Below are positions 8,043 to 51,606 of a DNA stretch of 64,000 bases, piece after piece. The DNA lies in the IMG/VR virus record IMGVR_UViG_3300032268_000986, positions 248,001 to 312,000 of that record; one strand, written 5' to 3'. The first letter of the stretch is position 1; each line of letters starts with the position of its first letter. Made by a program: the position numbers and the translations under genes. The notes under the pieces are model-generated. The model ran no database searches, was not told where the DNA came from, and saw only the letters and a list, made by a program, of their open reading frames with translations.

Positions 8043-9128
8043 TTATTGAAACGGTACTCTTGGGATAGTAATAATACTTGGAAGTGTGTGACTCTTATGG
8101 TCGTGTGGCTTGTGCGGCTTGTGCGGTGCGCCGTGAGGTTTGTTGTGTGCTCTCAAATCAGCTGACCCCAGGGCTTGGTCATAGTTGACTGCGCCTCTAA
8201 AACACCCAACAGCGTATGGAAATTCACGGTTCAAGTGATAGTGATAGATATTCTGCATCTTGCCGTCCCACATCACTGGATGAGTGTGTCCATGACATTC
8301 GTCCAGTTGGGCATTAGTGACCATTTTGCCATCATCGCCTCTGGGACCATAGATGCCAAAGCCGTCTAGGGCATAACCAAATAAAGGTGAATGACCTTCT
8401 GTGCCTTGATTGGGGAAACACTTCCATGAATAACCATGCAAGTGATATTGTTGAGCATAAGGATGACCCCAGCATTGGTCAACTGGCAACACTGAAGCTG
8501 GTGGGTACCATGCTGTGTTGCTGGCGTTTGCAATCTCAGCATGCCACACTGTGCCTGTGAGTGTGACACCAATTGGCAATGCGGCAATGGGATTTGGTTT
8601 GGCACTGACCTTGGGATATTTAGGTAGTTGAATATTTAAAACATAGGGACTAACGCCAATGGCTGCGGCACTGGAATAGTCTGAACCAGGAATGCCTGTT
8701 CTAAAATCGTGTCCACCGGGTGCCACACTGTAATATTTGTAAGCAGGGGTGCCGGGCTGTACTGGAAAGTCGCCCATTGGGGTATTTGGCAATCCATTGC
8801 CCACAAAATAACGATAGTTGGCATCTTCGGTAATGGCAAACACACTGCCTTCCTTGGCATAGTCCGTGGCATATTTGGTACCACTCACATATGGCATCTT
8901 TGCGATGACCACAGTGTTGTTTGTAGTATCCATCCAAGGCTGTGTGCTTAGTTTAAATCTTGTGTTGGCCGGAACTGCCGCAAGAAAATCTGCAGCCATG
9001 AACAGTCCATTGCGTTGGGCCTGGTAAGGACTTATGGTTCCGGCGCTTAACAATGTTGTCGGTGCATCTTGGGCCGCAACCACATGGCTACATAGAGCCA
9101 ATGCAAATGCTAATAAGATTTTTTTCAT
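8043..9128 (-). CDS. exported YHYH-domain protein
   Basis: Signal peptide MKKILLAFALALCSHVVAA; YHLHG, GYALDGFGIYGP, LDECHGH, YHYH motifs; His-rich tail. Confidence 0.85.
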   Translation of the reverse strand: MKKILLAFALALCSHVVAAQDAPTTLLSAGTISPYQAQRNGLFMAADFLAAVPANTRFKLSTQPWMDTTNNTVVIAKMPYVSGTKYATDYAKEGSVFAITEDANYRYFVGNGLPNTPMGDFPVQPGTPAYKYYSVAPGGHDFRTGIPGSDYSSAAAIGVSPYVLNIQLPKYPKVSAKPNPIAALPIGVTLTGTVWHAEIANASNTAWYPPASVLPVDQCWGHPYAQQYHLHGYSWKCFPNQGTEGHSPLFGYALDGFGIYGPRGDDGKMVTNAQLDECHGHTHPVMWDGKMQNIYHYHLNREFPYAVGCFRGAVNYDQALGSADLRAHNKPHGAPHKPHKPHDHKSHTLPSIITIPRVPFQ

Positions 9129-9539
9129 TTAGTTTCCTTTTGTTGGTATGTGGTATGTTTTGGCAAAGATGTCTGTTTTAACAACACCGTAATCACCTGG
9201 GCCATGACGAACAATATAGTCATTGCCTTTGGTGTATTCTAAGTTGCCCCAGCTGGCTTTTACCACACCGTCATGGTCAGCCAGTCGAGCTGTTTTCATG
9301 ATCTTCTTGGGAGTAGCTGTGCCATCACCGTTGTCGTCGTAGTACGCAGAGAACTTGATGGGACTCACAGGATACCGCTCGCCCTTGGGGCCTGTGATGA
9401 TCTTGTGACCCACAGTGTAGTTCACAGGACCTTCTAGGGTGTCTACTGTGCCGTTGTCTGTGGCAGTTTCATAGCTAATGGGCGTTGGATGCTTGTAGGT
9501 TGTAAATCCACCTTGCTTGAACCAGTTGTCGTCAATCAT
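9129..9539 (-). CDS. PGDYG-family protein
   Basis: Internal duplication with GERYPV...F and PGDYGVV...IFAKTY motifs. Confidence 0.7.
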   Translation of the reverse strand: MIDDNWFKQGGFTTYKHPTPISYETATDNGTVDTLEGPVNYTVGHKIITGPKGERYPVSPIKFSAYYDDNGDGTATPKKIMKTARLADHDGVVKASWGNLEYTKGNDYIVRHGPGDYGVVKTDIFAKTYHIPTKGN

Positions 9540-10636
9540 AAATTAGGCAATTCCTCGTAGTCAATGGCATCTCCCATGACACCAATAACATAGTTAGTTG
9601 ATTCGTTTTCCTGGAGCGCAGTTTGTTTCTTGCTGGTGTCCACATGCTTGTTGAACCACGGTATGGGTGTGCTTCTGGGTGCTGGTTCTAAATACTTGAT
9701 ACCAATTTCCTTGAGAGCATTGGCTGCTGTATAATCCACAAAGTCACGCAAGATGTTGGCATTGAGACCAATCACTGGACCATACTTGAACAAGTGGTTG
9801 GCCCAGTCTTTTTCTTCACGAATTACATCCAAGTATAACTGATACACTTCTCGCTCACACTCGGCTTTGGCTGCGGCAAAGCGTGGATCTTCTTTTACAA
9901 CTTGATTGATCAACCACCCTGTCCAGTCCCGGTGCAGGATTTCGTCTTGTAAAATCAACTGAATGATGTTGCCATTGCCAATAAAGATACGGTTCTCTAC
10001 CATGGCCAAGCTGGTGGCAAACGATACCATGAAACGGAATGCTTCCAATGCATAGCTGGCATTGAGTGCCAACCAAATTGCTCGGATGTGTTCACTCTCT
10101 GTGATTAGTTCGCCTGCTTCTTTACGACAGTTGATCACATGCAATGCATCGTAGTAGTTGCCCACACTGCTTGCCATGTCCACAATCTCTTGTGTGTCGT
10201 GAATGGTGTTGAACACATCCTTGGGCACGTTGTAGATGTTACGGATAATATGACTGTAGCTGCGACTATGAATATTGGTTTCAAAGAAGCTCCAGTTGAA
10301 CATCAAGGCTTCCAGTTCAGGAATGCCCACCACAGGAGTAAACACCTGTGCTGGTCCACGACCTTGCAAACTATCTAGAGCTGTTTGACGCAACAGGTTT
10401 GATGTAAAGATGTGTTTCACAGTGTCTGACGCTTCCTTGAAGTCATTGGCATCTTTGGTCAACGATACTTCTTCTGGCACCCAAAAGAACCCCCGGGCCT
10501 CTTGTTCAAATTTCACAAGTTTGTTGTACTTGACTTCTTCAAATCGTTGAATGGTCACGGGACCGGCAGGGTCCAAGAACATTTTACGATTGAGATAATC
10601 TGTTTTTGTTGATAAATTATATTGTTCTTTGCTCAT
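9536..10636 (-). CDS. nrdB: ribonucleotide reductase class Ia beta subunit
   Basis: FFWVPEEV, E-IHSRSY (radical Tyr), LEAFRF, DEILH diiron ligands. Confidence 0.95.
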   Translation of the reverse strand: MSKEQYNLSTKTDYLNRKMFLDPAGPVTIQRFEEVKYNKLVKFEQEARGFFWVPEEVSLTKDANDFKEASDTVKHIFTSNLLRQTALDSLQGRGPAQVFTPVVGIPELEALMFNWSFFETNIHSRSYSHIIRNIYNVPKDVFNTIHDTQEIVDMASSVGNYYDALHVINCRKEAGELITESEHIRAIWLALNASYALEAFRFMVSFATSLAMVENRIFIGNGNIIQLILQDEILHRDWTGWLINQVVKEDPRFAAAKAECEREVYQLYLDVIREEKDWANHLFKYGPVIGLNANILRDFVDYTAANALKEIGIKYLEPAPRSTPIPWFNKHVDTSKKQTALQENESTNYVIGVMGDAIDYEELPNL

Positions 10637-11578
10637 TTATGTTTCCAGTGAATACTTAATTATGCCGCTGCGAACACTGTGTTCAACAACCAAGTTGTGC
10701 TGTGGCTTGACCAAGATAACAGGGTTTTCCCCAGGTCCCCAGTGTCCGGTGTCCAGGTAAAGTTTGTCTGAATCTTGTTGCATGCCCATGCGAGGCACAA
10801 CCAACACTGTTTTATCACGCCAGTTGTCAGTGGGTATTTCAAGCACCAACGAACGTGTGTCTTTGTTCCAGGTCATGACACAGTAACTGGCCACACAGGT
10901 GCCTGCTTGTACTGCTCGCATGTATGGAATCCAATTCCAAATAGTGGAAACTTCTCGATCAAATTGCATAATGCCATTGGTTAGTTCTATTGGCGGTGTG
11001 GGCAAGAACGTACAATCGTATGTTTTACATAATAATTCATTTACTGTGCGCACAAACTCCGAATCAATATCTACTCCTGGATTGAATATCCTGTTGACTT
11101 CTTCTTGTTGTTGTATGCCACATGCAAAACTATCTGGAACTTCTACTGCCCACATTTCTAAAAAATACTTGCCGGGTAAAAACGTAGATTTTTCATCACG
11201 TGGCAAACTATTCCACAATCCTTCCCACCACAAGTTGCCATTCACAGTCTCTGTAAATGTAATAGGCGTGGGCTGATAGTTGTGATCATAACGTTCATTG
11301 ATCAACTCAATTCGATCTGCCAGTTTTAATTGTTTAATAATTTCGCAACCAAGTTGATAACGATCATGGTCAATTTCGAATGCACGAATATGTCTGGCAC
11401 CATGTTTTAGTGCCAACATTGATAACAATCCTGTGCCAAACCCAATGTCGGTACAGTGTTGATTGGCCACATAACGAGAGAGAATTCTCTCGTAAAATTG
11501 ATTGCGAACAAAGTCATTGATCATGTTGAGGTTAACACCATCGTGTTGATACCAATCAATCTTGTTTAAAAAATCCAT
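10637..11578 (-). CDS. SAM-dependent methyltransferase, PRMT-like; start probably MDFL at 11578
   Basis: MIND..RN..Y, DIGFGTGLLS.LA..HGA, E-x8-E loop (ETVNGNLWWE), late TGHW motif; TAATG coupling to the upstream ORF. Confidence 0.75.
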   Translation of the reverse strand: MDFLNKIDWYQHDGVNLNMINDFVRNQFYERILSRYVANQHCTDIGFGTGLLSMLALKHGARHIRAFEIDHDRYQLGCEIIKQLKLADRIELINERYDHNYQPTPITFTETVNGNLWWEGLWNSLPRDEKSTFLPGKYFLEMWAVEVPDSFACGIQQQEEVNRIFNPGVDIDSEFVRTVNELLCKTYDCTFLPTPPIELTNGIMQFDREVSTIWNWIPYMRAVQAGTCVASYCVMTWNKDTRSLVLEIPTDNWRDKTVLVVPRMGMQQDSDKLYLDTGHWGPGENPVILVKPQHNLVVEHSVRSGIIKYSLET

Positions 11579-11769
11579 TACCAGTGCCTTATTGTGTTTG
11601 CCATGATAAACAAACATGTGATCACATGCAGTATCACCCAGAATGTTTTTAAAAACAATGCTATTCGGGCTTCGCGTAGTGTCAAGATAGGCACATCGGG
11701 CCTATCACTGTCAGACTTGCCCATCAAATGACCAGTGGCTCTGGCCCAGATTCGTTCAATACTGTTCAT
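11578..11769 (-). CDS. small membrane protein (63 aa); start probably MNSIE at 11769
   Basis: Hydrophobic C-terminal helix; stop overlaps the next ATG. Confidence 0.65.
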   Translation of the reverse strand: MNSIERIWARATGHLMGKSDSDRPDVPILTLREARIALFLKTFWVILHVITCLFIMANTIRHW

Positions 11770-11773
11770 GTGT

Positions 11774-12094
11774 TTATATTCTAAAACTTTCGCCGCAACC
11801 ACATCGGTCGCGTTCATTGGGATTGACAAATTCAAATCCTTCGTTTAAACCATTGCGCACATAGTCCACTTGCATGCCGTCAAGATACACATGGCTTTTG
11901 GGATCCACAAACAGTTTACACTGTGCGGAATCAATACAGATGTCATCGGGGGCAGGAGTATCTACATATTCTAACACATAAGCCAGGCCCGAGCAACCAG
12001 TGGTTCTAACGCCCAGACGTATGCCAAGCCCGCGACCTCGTTTGCTCAGTACTCGTGTGACCTGAGATTCAGCTGCGGGAGTCAGCGTTATCAT
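11774..12094 (-). CDS. iscA: A-type Fe-S carrier protein IscA
   Basis: [16 protein letters not shown] and C-terminal RCGCGESF. Confidence 0.92.
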
Positions 12095-12402
12095 ACGCCA
12101 AAACTGCTGCCGCAGCCACAGGTGGTAGTGGCGTTGGGATTGTTGATAACAAACTGACTGCCATTTAGGTCGTCTTTGAAATCTACCATGGCCCCGGCCA
12201 GGTACTGCATGCTCATGGCATCGGCTAGAACACCATCAATTTCAAAGTCGTCTTCGTTTTTGACTTCATCAAATGTGAATCCATACTGGAATCCTGAACA
12301 TCCACCGCCCTGCACAAACACTCGGACTTTTAGATTGGGATTGTTTTCTTCAACCAAGAGGTCAGAGATTTTTGATTTTGCTGATTCAGTTATGGTTATC
12401 AT
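12091..12402 (-). CDS. erpA: A-type Fe-S carrier protein ErpA/HesB-like
   Basis: [20 protein letters not shown] and TCGCGSSF. Confidence 0.9.
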
Positions 12403-12778
12403 GTTTTTCTCGGTAATCTTTTACAGCCGCCTTTATGGCATCTTCGGCCAGTATTGAGCAGTGTATCTTCACTGGCGGTAATGCTAGTTCTTCGGCGATT
12501 TGGGAGTTTTTGATGGCGCCTGCTTGGTCAAGTGTTTTTCCTTTGACCCATTCTGTAACAAGGCTGCTTGACGCAATCGCCGATCCGCAGCCATACGTTT
12601 TGAAGCGAGCATCTGTAATAATACCTGTATCATCATCTACCTTTATTTGTAGTTTCATAACATCGCCACAGGCTGGAGCACCCACCATGCCGGTGCCTAT
12701 GTCTGTGTCGTCCTTGCCAAACGATCCCACATTGCGTGGATTCTCATAGTGATCAATAACTTTGTTAGAATAAGCCAT
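12386..12778 (-). CDS. iscU: Fe-S scaffold protein IscU
   Basis: [43 protein letters not shown]. Confidence 0.96.
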
Positions 12779-12804
12779 GTGATATTTCCTTGTTGATTAT
12801 AACA

Positions 12805-12810
12805 TATTTA
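12805..12810 (-). promoter_or_regulatory. TAAATA late-promoter-like motif upstream of iscU
   Basis: Motif in the short gap before iscU; same motif precedes virion genes. Confidence 0.5.
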
Positions 12811-12823
12811 CTGGGCCAATACA

Positions 12824-13525
12824 TTATTTGGTTATCCAGTCGCACAGTGTTTGTGCAATTAATTCATGGCCTAGCTCGTTTGGGTGGCCACAGGTCCGCA
12901 AATATGGGTTTGATGGACTGTCTAGATCATCCAAATAGTCTGTCATGTCTTTGTATCCAAATAGTTGCACACAAGATTTGTGGTATATCCTATCAGTGTT
13001 AACACCTGGTAAATTTAGATCAATATCACTCCATCCAACAATGTAATAATCTTGTATTTTGTACTGTTGACATATTGCCTGCATGCTCAATACGTTTTTG
13101 TGTAGATTAAAATCTACCCCAGAAATTGAACTAAAATATTTTGTATAACTCCGAGACGCTTCATCAGTTTGGCCAGACCTCAAATCAACCACCTTGAACC
13201 CAGCAAGGTCCTTGGAAACAGTGATGTGTTTATTTACATCAGGAATGGGACTGTATAAATCCAATAGCACACAGTCTCTTGCCGGAGTAGTAATTAAAAA
13301 AACTGCCATTGAATTTTCCACATCTACATCGGTGCGCCGAACATAGTCCAGCAGTTGCAATACTGATCTGCTGTTGCTGGATCCGTTTATACCCAAATTG
13401 GTAAAATTGGTAGTGGATAATTTAACAGCCAGGCGTGCTCCAAATGTATCTGTTGGCAGAACTCCGGCACCTGCGGTCCAGCTGCATCCAAACACTGCCA
13501 ATGCAGGCATGGTCACAACTTGCAA
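12824..13525 (-). CDS. SGNH/GDSL-like hydrolase or acyltransferase
   Basis: VFGCSWTAG, N.GINGSSN, GHPNELGH blocks. Confidence 0.75.
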   Translation of the reverse strand: MQVVTMPALAVFGCSWTAGAGVLPTDTFGARLAVKLSTTNFTNLGINGSSNSRSVLQLLDYVRRTDVDVENSMAVFLITTPARDCVLLDLYSPIPDVNKHITVSKDLAGFKVVDLRSGQTDEASRSYTKYFSSISGVDFNLHKNVLSMQAICQQYKIQDYYIVGWSDIDLNLPGVNTDRIYHKSCVQLFGYKDMTDYLDDLDSPSNPYLRTCGHPNELGHELIAQTLCDWITK

Positions 13526-15834
13526 GCCTCGCAGTCCTCGACATCATCAAAATCAATTTGTTCCAATGATGCGGCTACTTCTTCGGGTTTCATTTTACTG
13601 CCTGCTTTGTTGATCAAGCTGTAGTAGAATGTTTTCAGTCCCCAGTAGTGGGCTTGCATTAAATTTTTAGCAATCAGAGTTGTGGGCACTTTGCGATCAG
13701 CCCAGTGTGCTGGGTTGTAAAATGTATTGGTTGATATGCTTTGATCCACATACGCTGCCAACACGGCTGCTGTTTTCAAGTAGCCGTCACAGTCTTTCTG
13801 TGCCCACATCAGTTGATATCGATTCTTGAGTCTTTGATAATCTGGCACCACTTGTGTGAGTGATCCAGCCTTGCTTTCTTTTACAGAGATTAGACTCATG
13901 GGCATTTCAATGCCATTGGTAGAATTGATCACAACTGAACTGGATTCCACCGGTGCAATGGCCATTTGGGTGGCATTGCGAACACCATGTTCTTTCATTT
14001 GTGCTCTCAACGGTTCCCAATCCAGTTCAGGAGCAAAGTCTGCTAGATCGTTTACACCCTGAGCTCTTAATTCCCAGGGGAATACACCTTGTCCATATCG
14101 TGTTTGGTCACTGCCTTCACAACGGCCACGTTCCCGGGCCAGCTCAACACTGGCTTCGGTCAAATAGTATGCCTGGTGTTCGGTCCATGTTTTGACATCT
14201 TGCAGGGCATCCTTTTCACCGTACTTGAACCCACGTTTGGCATGCCAGTATGACAAATTGGTAACCCCAATACCCAAGGGACGAATTTCATCATTGCTTA
14301 ATTTGGACTGAATGCTTAAAAAGTCTTGATAGTCCAATATATTATTGAGACTACGGTGTAGGATGCGACAAGCACGGCGCATGTCTTCAGGATTACGAAA
14401 TGCGCCCCAGTTGATTGAGCCCAAGGTGCAAAGTGCAATACGGCCAGACTCGTCATCCAAACGTTTAAAAGACTTGGTAGGAAGTAGAATTTCACAGCAG
14501 AGGTTACTCTGGTAAATGGTGTGGTACTCAGGATCAAACGGACCTTGCTTCATGACATTGTCAATGAACACTAGATAGATACGTCCTGTATCTGTTCTCT
14601 CTTTTAATATGCCACCCTTGAACACTTCTTCCGCAGCCATTACTTTCTTTCGAAGTCCACCCTGCTTTTCGTATTTGACATACAGTTCTTCAAACAGTGC
14701 AGTGTTTGTGTAGAACGCTTCGTACAAATCAGGAACTTCGTTGGGGTCAAAGAAACTTATGTTTTCTCGGTTTTTAAATCGTCTCCAGAAGAAAGCACTA
14801 AGCACAACCCCATAATCCATATGACGGACTCGGGTTTCTTCGGTTCCTTGGTTGTTTTTAAGTACAATAAGATCATCAAACTGATGATGCCAAATAGGAT
14901 AGAATACAGTAGCACTTGCATTACGAATACCTCCCTGTGAACATGATCGTAAATCTCCGAACCATTTTTTCAGGAAAGGTATCATACCTGTGTGCATAAT
15001 CTCACCACCACGGATGGGACTACCCAATGGTCGTAGTCGACCAATCTCCAACCCAATGCCGGCTCGCTTGCTGGCATACTTGGCCATCATTTCCCCGGAC
15101 GCAAAAATACTGTCCAGATCATCATCCGAGCGAATAAGAACGCAACTACTAAATTGCTTAGTAGGTGTACCAAGTCCTGCCAGCACCGGCGTGGCCAATG
15201 TAAATAATCCGTCACTGGCTGCTGTGTAGTACTCTTTGATGTAGCGCATTCTCGCTGTGTTCGGTTCTTCTGAGTGAAATACAGTAGCGGCCGCGACCAT
15301 GTATCTAACTTGTGGAGTTTCATATATTTCCTTTGTGGCACGATTGCGTACCAGATATTTTTCAATCAACTGCTCAATGGCTGCATAACTGTATTGTTCA
15401 TCTTTGTCATGATCAATCATGGCCTCCATCTTGTTCCAGTCTTCTGGTGTGTACCACTCCAACAACTCGGGAGTGTAAAGACCAATTTCTACATTGCGTT
15501 TGACAATCTCGTAAAGATGCGGGGGCTGGTATGAACCATACACATCTTTGCGCAACATGCTCAAGCGTTGTTTGCCGGCCACATACTGATAGTTGACATG
15601 TCCAACATCAGGATTGGCTTCCACATCAATCAAGTCCACGATGGCACGTAAGGTAATGCCATCAATTTCACGAGTAGAGATTCCATCGTAAAAATGCATC
15701 TGAGCTTTGATTTCGATCATGCTCTGACTCACATCTGCTGTGCCCTTGCACACCTTGGCCACTTGATTTTGCCACTTTTCAATATGCAGCAGTTCTCGGC
15801 TGCCGTTGCGCTTTTGTACAGAGATTGTTTTCAT
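13513..15834 (-). CDS. nrdA: ribonucleotide reductase class Ia alpha subunit with ATP cone
   Basis: VQKRNG ATP cone, QFSSC, QSNLCCEI, LCTLG, APVESSS, C-terminal CEACKL. Confidence 0.97.
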   Translation of the reverse strand: MKTISVQKRNGSRELLHIEKWQNQVAKVCKGTADVSQSMIEIKAQMHFYDGISTREIDGITLRAIVDLIDVEANPDVGHVNYQYVAGKQRLSMLRKDVYGSYQPPHLYEIVKRNVEIGLYTPELLEWYTPEDWNKMEAMIDHDKDEQYSYAAIEQLIEKYLVRNRATKEIYETPQVRYMVAAATVFHSEEPNTARMRYIKEYYTAASDGLFTLATPVLAGLGTPTKQFSSCVLIRSDDDLDSIFASGEMMAKYASKRAGIGLEIGRLRPLGSPIRGGEIMHTGMIPFLKKWFGDLRSCSQGGIRNASATVFYPIWHHQFDDLIVLKNNQGTEETRVRHMDYGVVLSAFFWRRFKNRENISFFDPNEVPDLYEAFYTNTALFEELYVKYEKQGGLRKKVMAAEEVFKGGILKERTDTGRIYLVFIDNVMKQGPFDPEYHTIYQSNLCCEILLPTKSFKRLDDESGRIALCTLGSINWGAFRNPEDMRRACRILHRSLNNILDYQDFLSIQSKLSNDEIRPLGIGVTNLSYWHAKRGFKYGEKDALQDVKTWTEHQAYYLTEASVELARERGRCEGSDQTRYGQGVFPWELRAQGVNDLADFAPELDWEPLRAQMKEHGVRNATQMAIAPVESSSVVINSTNGIEMPMSLISVKESKAGSLTQVVPDYQRLKNRYQLMWAQKDCDGYLKTAAVLAAYVDQSISTNTFYNPAHWADRKVPTTLIAKNLMQAHYWGLKTFYYSLINKAGSKMKPEEVAASLEQIDFDDVEDCEACKL

Positions 15835-18903: not shown

Positions 18904-18932
18904 AGTTTAACACAAAATTGTCAGTGTGTCAA
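18904..18932 (-). promoter_or_regulatory. sigma70-type promoter TTGACA-N17-TAAACT
   Basis: TTGACA cactgacaattttgtgt TAAACT. Confidence 0.7.
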
Positions 18933-20215
18933 CCGCGAACTTGGTAATATGATTCTTGGTCAGATTCGGACAACAGATCCCACAACCTTGAATTGTAATC
19001 TTTCATTTCAATTCGAGTACGGTTGTCAAAATCTGCTGCCATGGTGAGATATTCATTCCACAAACGGTTATTGTCCGGACTATCACCCAAGCAAAATGCA
19101 TGCAGTCCTTCGATAAAAGTTCTAAATGTGTTCCATCCTGGATTGTCTGACGCCTGTGCAATTTGCAATGCACGATTGCATCTTTGGGCTAGTTCAAGTC
19201 GACATCGTTTTGGCATGACTTCCACGGCTGCATATTCGGGCCAGTGCAAATACATGATGCTAAAGTCTGGTTGTTGGTTGTGAGTTTTACCCCATTGATC
19301 CCAGTATTCAGCAATGCTGTCAATGTAAAACACATTACTCACGCTGATAACCAAATTGATGTTGAAATCAAATTGACCCGGATTGGCCTTTTTCAGATCC
19401 AGAGCTTGTTGTACAGTGCGTTCTATTCTTTCAAAACGTGCTGGCCAACGCACATAGTGATAGTTTTCCCCAACACTGTCAATGCTGAAGTTCAAGAACA
19501 CTCGACGAAATTTAGGAATAGCATCCACAAACATTTGATTGATACTGGTGCCATTGGTCGTGGCACTGAGGATCACTCGTTGTGAAAAGTCTTCGCCTAG
19601 ACTGTCCAAGAACTCCATTAGTCGATCCAGTCCAGGCTGTATCATGGATTCTCCGCCAGTCAAATTGATTTCAACAAATCGGTACGTGTTCAACACATCC
19701 ACTAGATACTGTTTAACAGTTGACCATATCACAGGATCATCGGTGATGTCCTGAACAAAATGATCCAGTGCTGGCTGTTTTAATACATCGGCTAGTAGGC
19801 TGCTGAATTCTGGTTGGCAACTTCGGCAAGCAAGATTACAAAGATTACTGAATTTGATAGTGACTCTGTTGGAGTCAGTTTGAGGAGAAAATTCTAAATT
19901 ACTGCTGAGTGTATTAACTGAATCTCGCATGCGCTCTGACACACTGTTGTGCTGTTCGCTGTGAACACATACATGACACTGACTGTTGGTTTTTTGATCC
20001 AGTACATCTTGCTTGATCTCTTGAAACAATTCTGAGAAAGGGCGACCAAATTCCAAATCATTTTCGCGCCAATTGCAACAGGGAATTGCTCGCATGCCAC
20101 GACTGCCTTGCAGTAAGAAAAGATTCTGAAATGGCTTTGCGCAGGCGCTGGGATTCTGCTTGAGCCAAACTATTTTTTGGTCGTATAAGGATGCGGGGTC
20201 GTTGTTGATTGCCAT
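18929..20215 (-). CDS. radical SAM enzyme with N-terminal twitch/SPASM-like Cys cluster
   Basis: C.KPF...PCC and C..C at N-terminus; CNLACRSC; TGGE; TTNGT; SIDSVG..Y.YVRW. Confidence 0.88.
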   Translation of the reverse strand: MAINNDPASLYDQKIVWLKQNPSACAKPFQNLFLLQGSRGMRAIPCCNWRENDLEFGRPFSELFQEIKQDVLDQKTNSQCHVCVHSEQHNSVSERMRDSVNTLSSNLEFSPQTDSNRVTIKFSNLCNLACRSCQPEFSSLLADVLKQPALDHFVQDITDDPVIWSTVKQYLVDVLNTYRFVEINLTGGESMIQPGLDRLMEFLDSLGEDFSQRVILSATTNGTSINQMFVDAIPKFRRVFLNFSIDSVGENYHYVRWPARFERIERTVQQALDLKKANPGQFDFNINLVISVSNVFYIDSIAEYWDQWGKTHNQQPDFSIMYLHWPEYAAVEVMPKRCRLELAQRCNRALQIAQASDNPGWNTFRTFIEGLHAFCLGDSPDNNRLWNEYLTMAADFDNRTRIEMKDYNSRLWDLLSESDQESYYQVRG

Positions 20216-48960: not shown

Positions 48961-50015
48961 TATTCTTCCTCAACGTCAACAACAGGTGTGGCATCCTTTT
49001 GATTGCCAAAATCTTTCATCACAGTGTCAAGACAGCCGTCAGTATTGGCTTCCCATGCCTTGCGAAACTTCTTGATGATCTCGCCATCGCTTGTGGTAAA
49101 CACTAGACTGTTGCCTTCGCGTTTGAGCAGGCCTTTTTTCTCAATCAAGTCCACAAGACCTGAGTAAGGGCTCATGCCTGTTTCATAAGGAATCTTGACT
49201 TGCACTCCCTCGAACGGCTTGGCATAGCGTGTTTTCATTACTTTACAGCCAGCACGAATACCAGTTACATCTGAAATCTTGTTGCCGTCTTCGTCCTCTT
49301 TGAGTTTCATCTTCTTCATGGCCACCACAATTGAGCTGGCGTAAATGAAACCTTGACCACCTGAAATCTTGTCGTCTGGATCAAACATGTCTTGACTGGC
49401 GTATGTGTGATTGGTACAAACCAGGCCCACGTTGTAACTACCAAACATGTTGACACAGTTACGCACCAAGGCGGTAAGAGCTTTGGGCTTGCGACCTAGG
49501 TCACCTTTCATTTCGCCTGCATCAAATTGATTCACATCAGTGGGTGTCAGCAACATGCCCAGGCTGTCAATTACAAACATGACCTTGGGTCGCTCGGCAG
49601 GATCAAGAGCTTTGTAGTCGCTCATGAATGTAGAGATAGTTTTAGCTACATCGTCAATCATGGCCATTGACAATTTGAGTAACTTGCTGTCACTGGTATC
49701 AACTCCCAGGGCCTTGAGCCAGTCTTCGTCCAAGGCATTTTCGCTGTCAATCAACACTACAAAGATGCCTTGCTGTTGTGCATGTTTGATAATGTTGCCA
49801 CTACAGATGTAACTTTTACCTGCGCCCGAGTCACCGGCAAACACCGTGACCTTGCCCAAGGGGATACCTCGATCAAAGTCTCCTGAGATCAAGTAGTTCA
49901 AAGCATAGTTGCCTGTGGAGATCCAGTCTGTGGGATCATTGAATCCAATCGACAATCCGTCGATACTTTTTGTAATTTCCTTGCGGAATTTTGATACGTC
50001 AAATGGTTTAGCCAT
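48960..50015 (-). CDS. uvsX: RecA/UvsX recombinase
   Basis: STGNYALN, GDSGAGKS, IDSEN, VIDSLG, TNHTY, SGG.G..YASS. Confidence 0.95.
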   Translation of the reverse strand: MAKPFDVSKFRKEITKSIDGLSIGFNDPTDWISTGNYALNYLISGDFDRGIPLGKVTVFAGDSGAGKSYICSGNIIKHAQQQGIFVVLIDSENALDEDWLKALGVDTSDSKLLKLSMAMIDDVAKTISTFMSDYKALDPAERPKVMFVIDSLGMLLTPTDVNQFDAGEMKGDLGRKPKALTALVRNCVNMFGSYNVGLVCTNHTYASQDMFDPDDKISGGQGFIYASSIVVAMKKMKLKEDEDGNKISDVTGIRAGCKVMKTRYAKPFEGVQVKIPYETGMSPYSGLVDLIEKKGLLKREGNSLVFTTSDGEIIKKFRKAWEANTDGCLDTVMKDFGNQKDATPVVDVEEE

Positions 50016-51606
50016 GGTATTTTCCTTTGTAAATGATATCTGCTATTTCTGGATGTGTCTGATTAAATTTTTGATCTCTTATATTGTCTAATTTTAGCAT
50101 GAATTTTGATAGTTCGTCAATTAAATCTGGTGAATATTTGTTCTGTTTGAGTAAGGCAATGATAGGAAATACATTGTGTTTTATTAACTTGTCATGATCA
50201 ATTTGAGATAATTTGTCAATGACTTGAGTTGTTAATTCCGTATTCATTGCTGTTATGCTTAAAAATTTTGGGTGTTCTAATAAATTAAAATTTAATTTGT
50301 TAAATTTTTTTGTATCTACCCAGGTTATTAACTGATCAAGATAATAAACATTTTGAACATTAACTGTGGTAAAAATACTAAGGATCATGTTTGGTAGTTT
50401 GTTTTCTAAGAATTTATCTAAGTTAACATTGACCAAATCCCATTTCCCCCCGCGCTCTAATTCAAACCGTGTACCTATGTTATCTATGCTAAATGCAATG
50501 TCAACTTGTCGGAACAACTTCCATTTTTCAAACAAATGTGCTGGGTACACAGACCCGTTTGAATTGTAATGTAGTCTAATTTTGTGTGCCAGGTCATGCT
50601 CTATTAGATAATCTAAAAATGTCTCTTGTTGCTTGATGAGAAACGGCTCGCCACCATAAAAATCAATGTTAACCAGCTGATTTCCCAACGTGTTAAACAT
50701 TTTCCAAATTTGATCATTTTTGACCCACTGTCCTTTTCGATTGAGATTTTTGAGATCAATAATAGAGTCAAAGTGTCGTGCCTGTTCTTCTGCTATTTTT
50801 GAACTAGCGTCTGAATTGCATATTCTGCATGCAAAATTACAAAGATTTCCTAGTTTTAAATCTAGACTAACTAAATTTTCAAGTTGATCTTGCTCTATGT
50901 CTAAACATTGCGCATCAATCCCAAGACAATCACTGAACCACTGTCGATTTGATTGCCCTTTATGTTGTTCTTTCATCCAGCAGCTCGAACATCCGGCAGG
51001 ACGATCCCCGTCGAGAAATTGTGTTCTTAACCTTGTTAAATAGTCACTGTGGTAGACTTCTTCAATACTATTAGTATTGATATTGTAGGGAACATTGTTG
51101 GAATCCGTTATTGATTCTTTATACACACAACAAGGTCTAAATTCGCCTTGTGACGAAATTTCTAAATGTGCCCATGGACTAAAACAAAATGTGTCAGGCA
51201 AGGTAATTGCAGGATTCTTAACAACCTCAGGTGCGACGTCACTAAATTTTATGTCCAGTGTTGAAAAAATACAATCATCTGTTGAATAGTTGCGTCTAAC
51301 TAATTCAAGATGATCTTGATCAATGTCAGAACCAGAACTACAAATTAAAATAAAAAAGTTAGATATATCTAACAGCGTTGCGCTTTTTTGTATGTGTATT
51401 AAAGTTTCAACTGATATCAAATTTCTACTGTACAGAACTATTCGACTATGATCACTGTATTCTGGTTGGTACCATTGTTTAAATAATTTATACAGTGTTT
51501 TTCGAGGTTGACCAAGTAATTGATCTAGGTCGATTACACCAACTATTTGATAGTTGTAATGTTGTTCTAAATACTGTTTTAGGTCAGTTGAGGGTATCGG
51601 TGTCAT
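50008..51606 (-). CDS. radical SAM enzyme with twitch-like Cys cluster and extra N-terminal domain; AT-rich gene
   Basis: CFSPW.HL.I...G..RPCC, C.SCW, CNFACRIC, YGGEPF, YNSNG, FSIDNIG. Confidence 0.9.
   Translation of the reverse strand: MTPIPSTDLKQYLEQHYNYQIVGVIDLDQLLGQPRKTLYKLFKQWYQPEYSDHSRIVLYSRNLISVETLIHIQKSATLLDISNFFILICSSGSDIDQDHLELVRRNYSTDDCIFSTLDIKFSDVAPEVVKNPAITLPDTFCFSPWAHLEISSQGEFRPCCVYKESITDSNNVPYNINTNSIEEVYHSDYLTRLRTQFLDGDRPAGCSSCWMKEQHKGQSNRQWFSDCLGIDAQCLDIEQDQLENLVSLDLKLGNLCNFACRICNSDASSKIAEEQARHFDSIIDLKNLNRKGQWVKNDQIWKMFNTLGNQLVNIDFYGGEPFLIKQQETFLDYLIEHDLAHKIRLHYNSNGSVYPAHLFEKWKLFRQVDIAFSIDNIGTRFELERGGKWDLVNVNLDKFLENKLPNMILSIFTTVNVQNVYYLDQLITWVDTKKFNKLNFNLLEHPKFLSITAMNTELTTQVIDKLSQIDHDKLIKHNVFPIIALLKQNKYSPDLIDELSKFMLKLDNIRDQKFNQTHPEIADIIYKGKYHG

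What the first reader, a model, noticed from the sequence alone, without database searches (positions are those of the whole stretch)
10637..11578. Protein arginine methyltransferase (PRMT)-like enzyme in a bacteriophage
Beyond the generic SAM motif, the ORF has features typical of eukaryotic PRMTs: the pre-motif-I helix MIND..RN..Y, DIGFGTGLLS.LA...GA, a double-E loop with exact E-x8-E spacing (ETVNGNLWWE vs EWMGYCLFYE in PRMT1), and a late TGHW resembling the THW loop. It is translationally coupled between the isc cassette and nrdB. Inference: it methylates arginines on phage or host proteins, a modification barely described in phage biology.
Basis: partly seen in the sequence, partly recalled or inferred. 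Interest (0 to 1): 0.7.

Follow-up and report, generated by a model that had tools for sequence, protein, structure and literature searches.

The report
Phage-encoded PRMT-type arginine methyltransferase family
A 343-kb freshwater jumbo phage carries, just upstream of its ribonucleotide reductase small-subunit gene, a well-conserved enzyme that by sequence and predicted structure belongs with the arginine methyltransferases (PRMTs) known mainly from eukaryotes; it represents a large phage gene family that current annotation does not recognise, and its target is still unknown.

Summary
Window 10637-11578 (minus strand) encodes a 313-aa protein under strong purifying selection (dN/dS about 0.1). 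Pfam, PHROGs, NCBIfam and PADLOC give nothing above their cut-offs. Sequence searches of the PDB return almost only PRMTs (PRMT9 1e-10 with the single protein; PRMT7 5e-32 with a profile of 126 diverse relatives). The two glutamates of the double-E loop align exactly. The AlphaFold model (pLDDT 86) matches PRMT cores over both domains (Z 15.2, 262 residues). The C-terminal barrel is divergent: on its own it still ranks PRMT barrels first, but only weakly. The family is large (96 clusters at 50% identity with E<=1e-30). It occurs in viral or phage-like contigs and was absent from 50,697 GenBank phage records. In 44 of 55 IMG/VR loci the gene lies between nrdA and nrdB, usually abutting nrdB. 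The target is unknown. SznE, a bacterial enzyme that methylates free arginine, matches the model about as well as eukaryotic PRMTs do, so a small-molecule substrate stays open. The NrdB complex prediction gave no answer.

The parts
10637..11578 (-). PRMT-like methyltransferase gene, 313 aa plus stop
   Evidence: ORF and translation. 431 homologue clusters in metagenomes. dN/dS 0.08-0.14 against orthologues. PDB sequence hits are nearly all PRMTs.
11189..11578 (-). N-terminal SAM-binding Rossmann domain (residues 1-130)
   Evidence: HMM alignments to PRMT7, PRMT9 and TbPRMT7 cover residues about 11-150. The model has alternating strands and helices at high pLDDT.
11492..11524 (-). Pre-motif-I helix MINDFVRNQFY (residues 19-29). 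It holds M19, D22 and R25, which align with the M..D..R of PRMT helix alpha-Y.
   Evidence: It aligns with MLNDTKRNTIY of PRMT9 and MMNDEERNNFY of TbPRMT7. R25 126/126, M19 115/126, D22 115/126.
11423..11449 (-). Motif I DIGFGTGLL (residues 44-52), the glycine-rich SAM loop
   Evidence: G48 and G50 are invariant in 126 relatives and G46 is present in 125/126. It aligns with DIGAGTGIL of PRMT9.
11375..11383 (-). Post-I AFE (residues 66-68). E68 is the acidic residue expected to bind the SAM ribose.
   Evidence: E68 126/126. It aligns with the A(C/V)E of PRMT9 and TbPRMT7.
11222..11251 (-). Double-E loop ETVNGNLWWE (E110...E119)
   Evidence: It aligns with ETVDAGLFGE (PRMT9), ELFDTELIGE (PRMT7) and EIFGTMMLGE (TbPRMT7). 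E110 125/126; E119 is E 110 and D 9 of 126. Low pLDDT at 112-116, as expected of a mobile loop.
10640..11188 (-). C-terminal domain (residues 131-313): a divergent beta-barrel with an inserted helical arm
   Evidence: The whole model aligns with PRMT cores through to the last residue. Alone, the Foldseek top 28 are all PRMTs but with E 0.02-0.3. VIA wide gives Z 5.3-5.4 to the PRMT9, PRMT6 and CePRMT7 barrels. PF22528 does not detect it.
10979..11140 (-). Helix-loop-helix insertion (residues about 147-200) in the place of the PRMT dimerisation arm. This is the most variable part of the protein.
   Evidence: Helices 149-155 and 173-186 lie between strands 137-146 and 202-205. Indels among orthologues fall here. 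Its role as an arm is inferred, not tested.
10739..10750 (-). TGHW (residues 277-280), a THW-like loop followed by three terminal strands
   Evidence: H279 and W280 are invariant in close relatives. W280 is invariant in A2 and is W 112 and F 11 of 126; H279 is H 56, S 24, C 8 and N 8 of 126. A weak HMM alignment pairs it with the SHW of PRMT9. Low pLDDT at 279-282.
10634..10639 (-). Junction TAA-ATG: the stop of the methyltransferase abuts the start of nrdB
   Evidence: Sequence. A gap of 10 nt or less, or an overlap, in about 27 related loci.
9536..10636 (-). nrdB (ribonucleotide reductase small subunit), the conserved downstream neighbour
   Evidence: Pfam PF00268, 2.8e-41. It lies downstream of the methyltransferase in 44 of 55 IMG/VR loci.
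11578..11769 (-). Conserved 63-aa ORF with a hydrophobic C-terminus. Its stop overlaps the methyltransferase start (TAATG).
   Evidence: 24 other loci, about 80-90% identical. 399 homologues, some in bacterial contigs next to katG. No family match.
13513..15834 (-). nrdA (RNR large subunit), the upstream boundary of the conserved interval
   Evidence: Pfam PF02867, PF00317 and PF03477. Synteny.
11774..12778 (-). isc cassette (IscU and two A-type carriers). This is cargo specific to this phage's nrdA-nrdB interval.
   Evidence: Pfam PF01592 and PF01521 twice. In other loci the isc genes lie upstream of nrdA.

Best explanation
The gene encodes an active, SAM-dependent guanidino-N-methyltransferase of the PRMT superfamily. 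It belongs to a large family seen so far only in phages. SAM is expected to bind the Rossmann domain through the glycine loop 46-50, E68 to the ribose and R25 to the carboxylate. The guanidinium group of an arginine would be clamped between E110 and E119 of the double-E loop, under the H279/W280 loop contributed by the C-terminal barrel, and would be methylated on an omega nitrogen. The most likely substrates are arginine residues of one or more host or phage proteins, modified during the early or middle phase of infection. The gene sits in, and is probably co-translated with, the nucleotide-metabolism operon (nrdA ... nrdB). Shown here: homology, conservation of the catalytic residues, fold, purifying selection, phage restriction and synteny. 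Inferred: SAM use, arginine as acceptor, protein rather than free arginine, dimerisation, timing, and the type of product (mono- or dimethyl).
For: PDB sequence hits are almost only PRMTs: 1.3e-10 with the single sequence, 2e-14 with the close profile, and 5e-32 to 1e-17 with the diverse profile, where all 60 listed hits are PRMTs. The double-E glutamates, motif I, the post-I Glu and the M..D..RN..Y helix align residue for residue with PRMT7, PRMT9 and TbPRMT7. These residues are conserved in 126 relatives that share only 18-54% identity with the query. The AF2 model has pLDDT 86. The Foldseek PDB top 50 are all PRMTs over about 350 columns. VIA-align gives Z 15.2 with 262 of 313 residues aligned to TbPRMT7 residues 58-374. 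AFDB clusters and Swiss-Prot top hits are PRMTs. dN/dS is 0.08-0.14. The family is viral: ESM Atlas clusters are 86-100% Viruses, there are 55 IMG/VR loci, distant members lie in phage-like contigs, and no relative was found in 185,579 prokaryote species genomes apart from one 668-bp contig. The gene diverges faster (43-78% identity) than the flanking NrdA and NrdB (81-91%), and its C-terminal domain diverges faster than the catalytic domain. This pattern fits a protein that recognises a changing target. Arginine methylation of phage and host proteins during infection was recently observed by proteomics in phages without methyltransferases of their own (PMC13288928).
Against: No activity, substrate or expression data exist, and no RNA run was listed. 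The C-terminal barrel is divergent: PF22528 does not detect it, and alone it scores only E 0.02 and Z 5.4. The PRMT fold does not prove a protein substrate. SznE, which methylates free L-arginine, matches the model as well as eukaryotic PRMTs do (E 3.8e-11, TM 0.54). No RGG/GAR-rich candidate substrate is encoded in the 343-kb genome. The complex prediction with NrdB gave no answer. The other genes in the nrdA-nrdB interval are metabolic cargo, which would also suit a small-molecule enzyme.
Confidence: 0.5

Rival explanations
1. It is a small-molecule guanidino methyltransferase. Like SznE/StzE of the streptozotocin pathway, it would methylate free L-arginine, or another free guanidino or amidino compound, and so alter host metabolism rather than host proteins.
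For: SznE (UniProt A0A411EW25) is an arginine-guanidino methyltransferase acting on free arginine. It matches the model over residues 19-311 with E 3.8e-11 and TM 0.54/0.48, on a par with eukaryotic PRMTs. Bacterial two-domain proteins carrying PRMT_C exist. The genes that share the nrdA-nrdB interval in related phages are metabolic: isocitrate lyase, class II aldolase, fatty-acid desaturase, a Vut_1 transporter and the Isc proteins.
Against: No partner enzyme that would use methyl-arginine was seen next to the gene in any locus. The family sits in replication and early regions of many unrelated phages, including small ones. The substrate-side C-terminal domain evolves quickly, which is unexpected for an invariant small substrate. 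By sequence the nearest solved relatives are PRMT7 and PRMT9.
Confidence: 0.2
2. It is a PRMT dedicated to the ribonucleotide reductase module. It would methylate an arginine of NrdB, NrdA or an accessory protein, which would explain the tight and conserved coupling to nrdB.
For: The gene lies between nrdA and nrdB in 44 of 55 IMG/VR loci. It abuts or overlaps the nrdB start in about 27 of them, even where its own sequence has diverged to 43% identity. Here the junction reads TAAATG.
Against: Eleven more divergent family members lie in other contexts without RNR genes nearby, as do distant representatives. In 17 loci other genes are inserted between it and nrdB. The interval is a general cargo hot spot. 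The complex prediction of two copies plus NrdB scored 0.00, which the tool says is no evidence either way.
Confidence: 0.07
3. It is a methyltransferase for a different acceptor: a ribosomal protein lysine or N-terminus (like PrmA), rRNA (like RsmD), or a modified DNA base. The PRMT-like features would then be a retained scaffold.
For: There are weak hits confined to the motif-I region: Pfam PrmA 0.006, NCBIfam PrmA and RsmD and PADLOC mad2. JGI named a few homologues RsmD. A Vut_1 (queuosine-precursor transporter family) gene is the upstream neighbour in L001 and L004.
Against: All of those hits are far below the curated cut-offs (16.5 against 22 bits; 25.5 against 188; 21.6 against 117.5) and cover only about 50 residues. 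No PrmA or RsmD structure appears among the 60 best PDB profile hits or the top 50 structural hits. The arginine-clamping glutamates are nearly invariant. The known dPreQ1 methylase DpdM is an unrelated DUF3109 protein, and the genome has no TGT/DpdA.
Confidence: 0.08
4. It is a catalytically dead PRMT-like scaffold (a 'prozyme') that binds rather than modifies.
For: Inactive PRMT paralogues exist, for example the TbPRMT1 prozyme, which is among the PDB hits (6dnz_B). H279 is replaced by Ser, Cys or Asn in many distant relatives.
Against: In this protein and its close relatives every SAM-binding and catalytic position is intact and invariant. Across 126 relatives, G48, G50, E68 and R25 are invariant and E110 is present in 125/126. 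A Ser-Trp pair at the THW position also occurs in active PRMT5 (own knowledge).
Confidence: 0.03

Closest known systems
Eukaryotic PRMT7 / PRMT9 (including Trypanosoma brucei PRMT7, PDB 4m38 and 5eku)
   Same: Best sequence and structure matches: profile E 5e-32 (PRMT7), about 1e-27 (PRMT9) and 5e-26 (TbPRMT7), and Z 15.2 over both domains. Shared features are the M(I/L/M)ND..RN..Y helix, motif I, the post-I Glu, the double-E loop ending in G-E-G/S, and an (S/T/G)HW loop before the last three strands.
   Different: About 15% identity. It is a single 313-aa module with no tandem second module and no TPR or other accessory domain. The barrel is too divergent for Pfam PRMT_C, and its arm region differs. 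It is encoded by phages rather than eukaryotes. Product type and substrates are unknown.
Type I PRMTs (PRMT1/Hmt1, PRMT3, PRMT6, PRMT8, CARM1)
   Same: Same two-domain core, with profile E 1e-25 to 1e-18 and Z about 14-15. The catalytic residues are conserved.
   Different: Slightly weaker sequence matches than PRMT7 and PRMT9. Nothing here indicates asymmetric dimethylation.
SznE/StzE, the free L-arginine N-omega-methyltransferase of Streptomyces (UniProt A0A411EW25)
   Same: A prokaryotic enzyme with the same two-domain fold. It matches the model over residues 19-311 (E 3.8e-11, TM 0.54) and methylates a guanidino nitrogen.
   Different: SznE works inside a biosynthetic gene cluster with SznF. 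No such partner was seen next to the phage gene. 17% identity.
Bacterial 'PrmA-family' proteins carrying PRMT_C (Actinomycetota, Pseudomonadota, Acidobacteriota)
   Same: They are structural neighbours of a phage family cluster in the ESM Atlas (TM 0.6-0.65) and show that PRMT-type two-domain proteins exist in bacteria.
   Different: Pfam PRMT_C recognises them but not the phage protein. The relationship was not resolved here because no tree was built.
Phage enzymes that modify host proteins after infection, such as the T4 arginine ADP-ribosyltransferases Alt, ModA and ModB (own knowledge)
   Same: Enzymes made by a phage that put a chemical group on arginine side chains of host proteins early in infection. 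This is the kind of role proposed here.
   Different: Different chemistry (ADP-ribose from NAD, not methyl from SAM), an unrelated fold and no homology. The comparison concerns the likely role only.
PrmA (ribosomal protein L11 methyltransferase)
   Same: A class I SAM fold with a similar glycine-rich motif I. This is the only family that standard libraries report.
   Different: The scores are far below the cut-offs and confined to residues 32-92. PrmA lacks the double-E loop, the THW loop and the barrel, and no PrmA structure is among the best hits.

Membership tests
PRMT superfamily (protein arginine N-methyltransferase catalytic core) | Class I Rossmann SAM-binding domain with motif I (D/E-x-G-x-G-x-G) and a post-I acidic residue | tested here: met
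   DIGFGTG (44-50) and E68 align with PRMT7, PRMT9 and TbPRMT7. G48, G50 and E68 are invariant in 126 relatives.
PRMT superfamily (protein arginine N-methyltransferase catalytic core) | Pre-motif-I helix (alpha-Y) carrying the conserved Met, Asp and Arg (M-x-x-D-x-x-R...Y) | tested here: met
   MINDFVRNQFY aligns with MLNDTKRNTIY (PRMT9) and MMNDEERNNFY (TbPRMT7). R25 126/126, M19 and D22 115/126.
PRMT superfamily (protein arginine N-methyltransferase catalytic core) | Double-E loop: two glutamates eight residues apart that hold the guanidinium group | tested here: met
   E110 and E119 align with both glutamates of PRMT7, PRMT9 and TbPRMT7. E110 125/126; E119 is E or D in 119/126.
PRMT superfamily (protein arginine N-methyltransferase catalytic core) | THW loop in the C-terminal domain | tested here: inconclusive
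   GHW (278-280) lies before the last three strands, as THW does. W is W or F in 123/126, but His is kept in only 56/126. The HMM alignment to the SHW of PRMT9 is below significance. No residue-level structural alignment was available.
PRMT superfamily (protein arginine N-methyltransferase catalytic core) | C-terminal beta-barrel with an inserted dimerisation arm | tested here: inconclusive
   The whole model aligns with PRMT cores over both domains (Z 15.2, 262 residues). The domain alone ranks PRMT barrels first, but weakly (E 0.02; Z 5.4 against 5.0 for an unrelated chain). Pfam PF22528 gives no hit on it. A helix-loop-helix insertion lies at the position of the arm.
PRMT superfamily (protein arginine N-methyltransferase catalytic core) | Head-to-tail homodimer (or pseudo-dimer) needed for activity | not tested
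   The one complex job contained two copies, but only the NrdB partner was scored.
PRMT superfamily (protein arginine N-methyltransferase catalytic core) | Transfer of methyl from SAM to arginine omega-nitrogen in proteins | not testable with these tools
   Needs an enzyme assay or methyl-arginine proteomics.
SznE-type free-arginine N-omega-methyltransferases | PRMT-type two-domain fold | tested here: met
   A0A411EW25 matches residues 19-311, E 3.8e-11, TM 0.54/0.48.
SznE-type free-arginine N-omega-methyltransferases | Location in a biosynthetic cluster with enzymes that use N-methyl-arginine (such as SznF) | not tested
   No such neighbour appeared in the annotated contexts, but the genome was not searched for SznF-like proteins.
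PrmA (L11 methyltransferase, PF06325 / NF001785) | Full-length match above the curated cut-off, including the N-terminal substrate domain | tested here: not met
   16.5 bits against a cut-off of 22, residues 39-92 only. 25.5 against 188 bits.
RsmD (16S rRNA m2G966 methyltransferase, TIGR00095 / PF03602) | Match above the curated cut-off | tested here: not met
   21.6 against 117.5 bits. 14.5 against 24 bits.
DpdM (dPreQ1 DNA methyltransferase) | DUF3109 fold with a CxxxCxxCC metal site, and a DpdA/TGT partner in the genome | tested here: not met
   DpdM is a DUF3109 protein. There is no TGT in the 343-kb genome, although the control rang in 14 of 14 genomes.

The most novel reading that the evidence does not exclude
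Phages of many lineages encode their own PRMT-type enzymes that methylate arginines of host proteins, or of their own proteins, during infection. This would be a phage-driven protein modification with no described example. It would also give a source for the arginine methylation recently seen in infected cells, and a prokaryotic-virus branch of an enzyme family regarded as eukaryotic. In the jumbo-phage clade, the conserved coupling to nrdB could mean that the ribonucleotide reductase module is itself a target.
Probability: 0.45. Interest if true: 0.75.

Novelty: new variant of a known kind. Interest (0 to 1): 0.62.

Why it matters
Arginine methylation by PRMTs is a central regulatory modification in eukaryotes. 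It is barely known in bacteria, and in the searchable literature it has not been attributed to any phage enzyme: five full-text searches found no phage-encoded PRMT. A 2026 proteomics study found methyl-arginine on phage and host proteins in infected cells, in phages not known to encode methyltransferases. This work identifies a large, strongly conserved phage family with an intact PRMT catalytic site that Pfam, PHROGs, NCBIfam and PADLOC all miss. It gives a concrete gene to express and assay. If the targets are host proteins, this is a new kind of host take-over or counter-defence chemistry. If the substrate is free arginine, it is a new auxiliary metabolic gene. Either way it bears on the origin and spread of PRMTs outside eukaryotes.

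Tried and rejected
1. DNA hypermodification. A Vut_1 (queuosine-precursor transporter family) gene lies next to the orthologue in L001 and L004. This suggested methylation of a 7-deazaguanine. I rejected it because the known enzyme DpdM is an unrelated DUF3109 protein and the genome has no TGT/DpdA.

2. PrmA, RsmD and mad2 labels. All are motif-I-only hits far below their cut-offs.

3. Longer 326-aa N-terminus from ATG 11617. I rejected it because of in-frame stops in orthologues; the conservation there belongs to the overlapping 63-aa ORF in another frame.

4. Complex with NrdB (two copies of the methyltransferase plus NrdB). The score was 0.00, and the tool says this is no evidence either way.

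5. A phage-encoded RGG/GAR-rich substrate. None was found among 2,627 ORFs.

6. Expression evidence. No RNA run was listed, and the DNA runs are freshwater or lake metagenomes.

7. A cultured phage carrying the family. tblastn with four family members spanning its diversity found nothing in 50,697 GenBank phage records. megablast of the region also found nothing.

8. Cellular homologues. Two scans of 185,579 species genomes with narrow motif patterns gave only one 668-bp Clostridium contig.

9. A link between the 233-aa ORF upstream of the isc cassette (12824-13525) and the DUF6071 neighbour of the L049 homologue. There was no similarity.

10. Promoter and terminator scan. The counts were at or below the shuffled expectation, so it was not used.

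11. Contexts of divergent members. They lie among replication or early genes (redoxin, NAD synthase, 5'-3' exonuclease, DnaB, HNH, metallophosphatase), with no recurrent partner.
Full report
**What is there.**
- The minus strand of the window carries an ORF that ends with TAA at 10637-10639.
- A longer 326-aa reading from ATG 11617 is possible on paper but unlikely. Almost all homologues start at the equivalent of 11578, and three orthologous loci have in-frame stop codons in the extension.
- The nucleotide conservation upstream belongs to another gene. This is a 63-aa ORF (11578-11769) in a different frame, whose TAA overlaps the methyltransferase ATG as TAATG.
- Downstream, the TAA abuts the ATG of nrdB (TAAATG).

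**The genome is a phage.**
- The window encodes a large terminase, a DnaB-like helicase, another helicase and virion proteins.
- It is part of a 342,865-bp IMG/VR virus record estimated 99% complete.
- The terminase is 52% identical to that of the Pseudomonas jumbo phages of the PA5oct group.
- Near-identical DNA occurs in freshwater and lake metagenomes.

**The gene is real and constrained.**
- There are 431 homologue clusters at E<=1e-3 in metagenomes, 56-98% identical among those listed. None has an informative name.
- dN/dS against ten orthologues is 0.08-0.14, with synonymous sites saturated.

**Homology to PRMTs.**
- Standard libraries fail. Pfam gives only a sub-threshold PrmA hit on residues 39-92. 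PHROGs gives nothing. NCBIfam and PADLOC give only weak motif-I hits.
- A phmmer search of all PDB sequences returns 56 hits, almost all PRMTs. The best is PRMT9 at 1.3e-10, with ETVNGNLWWEG aligned to ETVDAGLFGEG.
- A profile of 37 close relatives improves this to about 2e-14.
- An exhaustive profile search of 1.84 billion representatives found 96 clusters (at 50% identity) with E<=1e-30 and 199 with E<=1e-10.
- A profile of 126 of these, which share 18-54% identity with the query, hits PRMT7 at 5e-32, PRMT9 at about 1e-27, TbPRMT7 at 5e-26, and PRMT1, 3, 8, CARM1, 6 and 2 at 1e-25 to 1e-17. All 60 listed hits are PRMTs.
- In those alignments the helix M-I-N-D-x-x-R-N-x-F-Y, motif I, the post-I glutamate and both glutamates of the double-E loop pair with their PRMT counterparts.
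- Across the 126 relatives:
  - R25, G48, G50, E68 and P135 are invariant.
  - E110 is present in 125.
  - E119 is E in 110 and D in 9.
  - M19 and D22 are each present in 115.
  - W280 is W in 112 and F in 11.
  - H279 is less conserved: H in 56, S in 24, C in 8 and N in 8.

**Structure.**
- The AlphaFold model from the 37-sequence alignment has mean pLDDT 86 and pTM 0.82. Its only very low-confidence stretches fall in the double-E loop (112-116) and the GHWG loop (279-282).
- Foldseek against the PDB returns only PRMTs in the top 50, aligned over about 350 columns (E about 1e-13).
- VIA-align gives Z 15.2 to TbPRMT7, with 262 residues aligned, model 1-312 to chain 58-374. All 50 listed entries are PRMTs.
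- AFDB cluster representatives and Swiss-Prot models agree.
It is therefore not met.
- I tested the barrel separately by folding residues 131-313 alone (pLDDT 86).
  - The Foldseek top 28 hits are again all PRMTs, but with E of only 0.02-0.3.
  - A Foldseek-independent search puts the barrels of PRMT9, PRMT6 and C. elegans PRMT7 first, at Z 5.3-5.4. That is barely above an unrelated chain at Z 5.0.
  - Pfam PRMT_C does not detect the domain.
- The C-terminal domain is therefore best described as a strongly diverged PRMT barrel. It has a helix-loop-helix insertion (about 147-200) where the dimerisation arm sits, and this is the most variable part of the protein.

**Distribution and context.**
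- The family looks viral.
  - ESM Atlas clusters nearest the protein are 86-100% Viruses.
  - 55 IMG/VR loci encode relatives.
  - Distant representatives lie in phage-like contigs with HNH, DnaB or metallophosphatase genes and many small unannotated ORFs.
  - BFVD holds one full-length match, from an uncultured phage and named only 'AdoMet_MTases domain'.
- Two scans of 185,579 prokaryote species genomes with narrow motif patterns gave only a 668-bp contig.
- tblastn with four family members found nothing in 50,697 GenBank phage records.
- In 44 of the 55 IMG/VR loci the gene lies between nrdA and nrdB.
  - In about 27 of them its stop is within 10 nt of, or overlaps, the nrdB start.
  - In 17 loci other genes are inserted between the two.
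- The nrdA-nrdB interval is a cargo hot spot. It holds the isc cassette here, isocitrate lyase plus Vut_1 in L001 and L004, and a fatty-acid desaturase and a class II aldolase in L014.
- The methyltransferase is the constant resident of this interval, yet it diverges much faster (43-78% identity) than NrdA and NrdB (81-91%).
- L037 has two tandem paralogues.
- Eleven more divergent members (28-42% identity) sit in other contexts, near redoxin, NAD synthase or 5'-3' exonuclease genes, without RNR.

**Mechanism and substrate.**
- The conserved residues are the ones that bind SAM and clamp the guanidinium group in PRMTs. This assignment rests on established PRMT structures, is my own knowledge, and was not re-derived here.
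- An active arginine-guanidino N-methyltransferase is therefore strongly indicated.
- Whether the arginine is in a protein is not settled.
- SznE/StzE of Streptomyces methylates free L-arginine. It has the same fold and matches the model as well as eukaryotic PRMTs do (E 3.8e-11, TM 0.54).
- I favour protein substrates, for four reasons:
  - The family is spread over many phage types, in early or replication regions.
  - No enzyme that would use methyl-arginine accompanies it.
  - Its substrate-side domain evolves fast.
  - By sequence it is closest to PRMT7 and PRMT9.
- No candidate substrate was found. No RGG-rich protein is encoded in the genome, and the complex prediction with NrdB gave no answer.
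- No RNA run was listed.

**Novelty.**
- Five full-text searches found no report of a phage-encoded PRMT.
- A 2026 study detected lysine and arginine methylation on phage and host proteins during infection. It noted that those phages are not known to encode methyltransferases.
- Another 2026 study describes methylation of a phage tail protein that depends on a host enzyme.
- PRMT-type two-domain proteins do exist in bacteria and archaea: the PRMT_C-bearing 'PrmA family' clusters, and SznE and MJ1452.
- The fold in prokaryotes is therefore not new. What is new is a large, divergent, phage-restricted branch that annotation does not recognise.
- I rate it a new variant of a known kind, with interest 0.62.

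Noticed in passing
window 11578-11769 (minus strand): An unannotated 63-aa ORF (MNSIERIWARATGHLMG...ANTIRHW) with a hydrophobic C-terminal stretch. It starts 4 nt after the iscA stop, and its TAA overlaps the methyltransferase ATG. It is more conserved (about 80-90%) than the methyltransferase in 24 other loci. It has 399 homologues, some at about 80% identity in Pseudomonadota MAG contigs of up to 1.16 Mb, where it lies beside katG and a DUF6552 gene. It is probably a host-derived small membrane protein, possibly linked to oxidative stress, and it gives a hint about the host. No family match.
   Followed up: partly
window 9536-15834; L001, L004, L014: The interval between nrdA and nrdB is a hot spot for variable auxiliary genes in this jumbo-phage clade. 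It holds IscU, two A-type carriers and a 233-aa ORF here, isocitrate lyase and a Vut_1 transporter in L001 and L004, and a fatty-acid desaturase, a class II aldolase and a 211-aa ORF in L014.
   Followed up: partly
window 11774-12778, 18929-20215, 50008-51606: The phage encodes its own Fe-S assembly proteins (IscU and two IscA/ErpA-like) and two large radical SAM proteins, one with a SPASM domain. This suggests a phage pathway that depends on Fe-S enzymes and also consumes SAM.
   Followed up: no
L037:3269-5184: Two tandem PRMT-like paralogues (59% and 38% identical to the window protein) lie between nrdA and nrdB.
   Followed up: no
L051:2301-3944: A 547-aa family member with a long acidic insertion or fusion after the catalytic domain. 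It could be a chimeric ORF call.
   Followed up: no
window 8043-9128 and 9129-9539 (minus strand): Downstream of nrdB lie a PGDYG-family protein (conserved next to nrdB in many loci) and a 361-aa YHYH-domain protein. The YHYH protein has a signal-peptide-like N-terminus and a His/Pro/Lys-rich C-terminus, and it is present only in this phage's arrangement.
   Followed up: no
G000:C1:1-60 (outside the window): The virus record begins with tandem copies of an 18-bp unit (GGGTGCTGCTCCGCCACT). This could be an assembly end or a repeat-rich gene.
   Followed up: no
Swiss-Prot Q58847 (MJ1452, Methanocaldococcus jannaschii): An uncharacterised 259-aa archaeal protein matches the whole model (E 1.7e-11, TM by hit 0.58). 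It ranks among the eukaryotic PRMTs and may be an unrecognised archaeal member of the fold.
   Followed up: no
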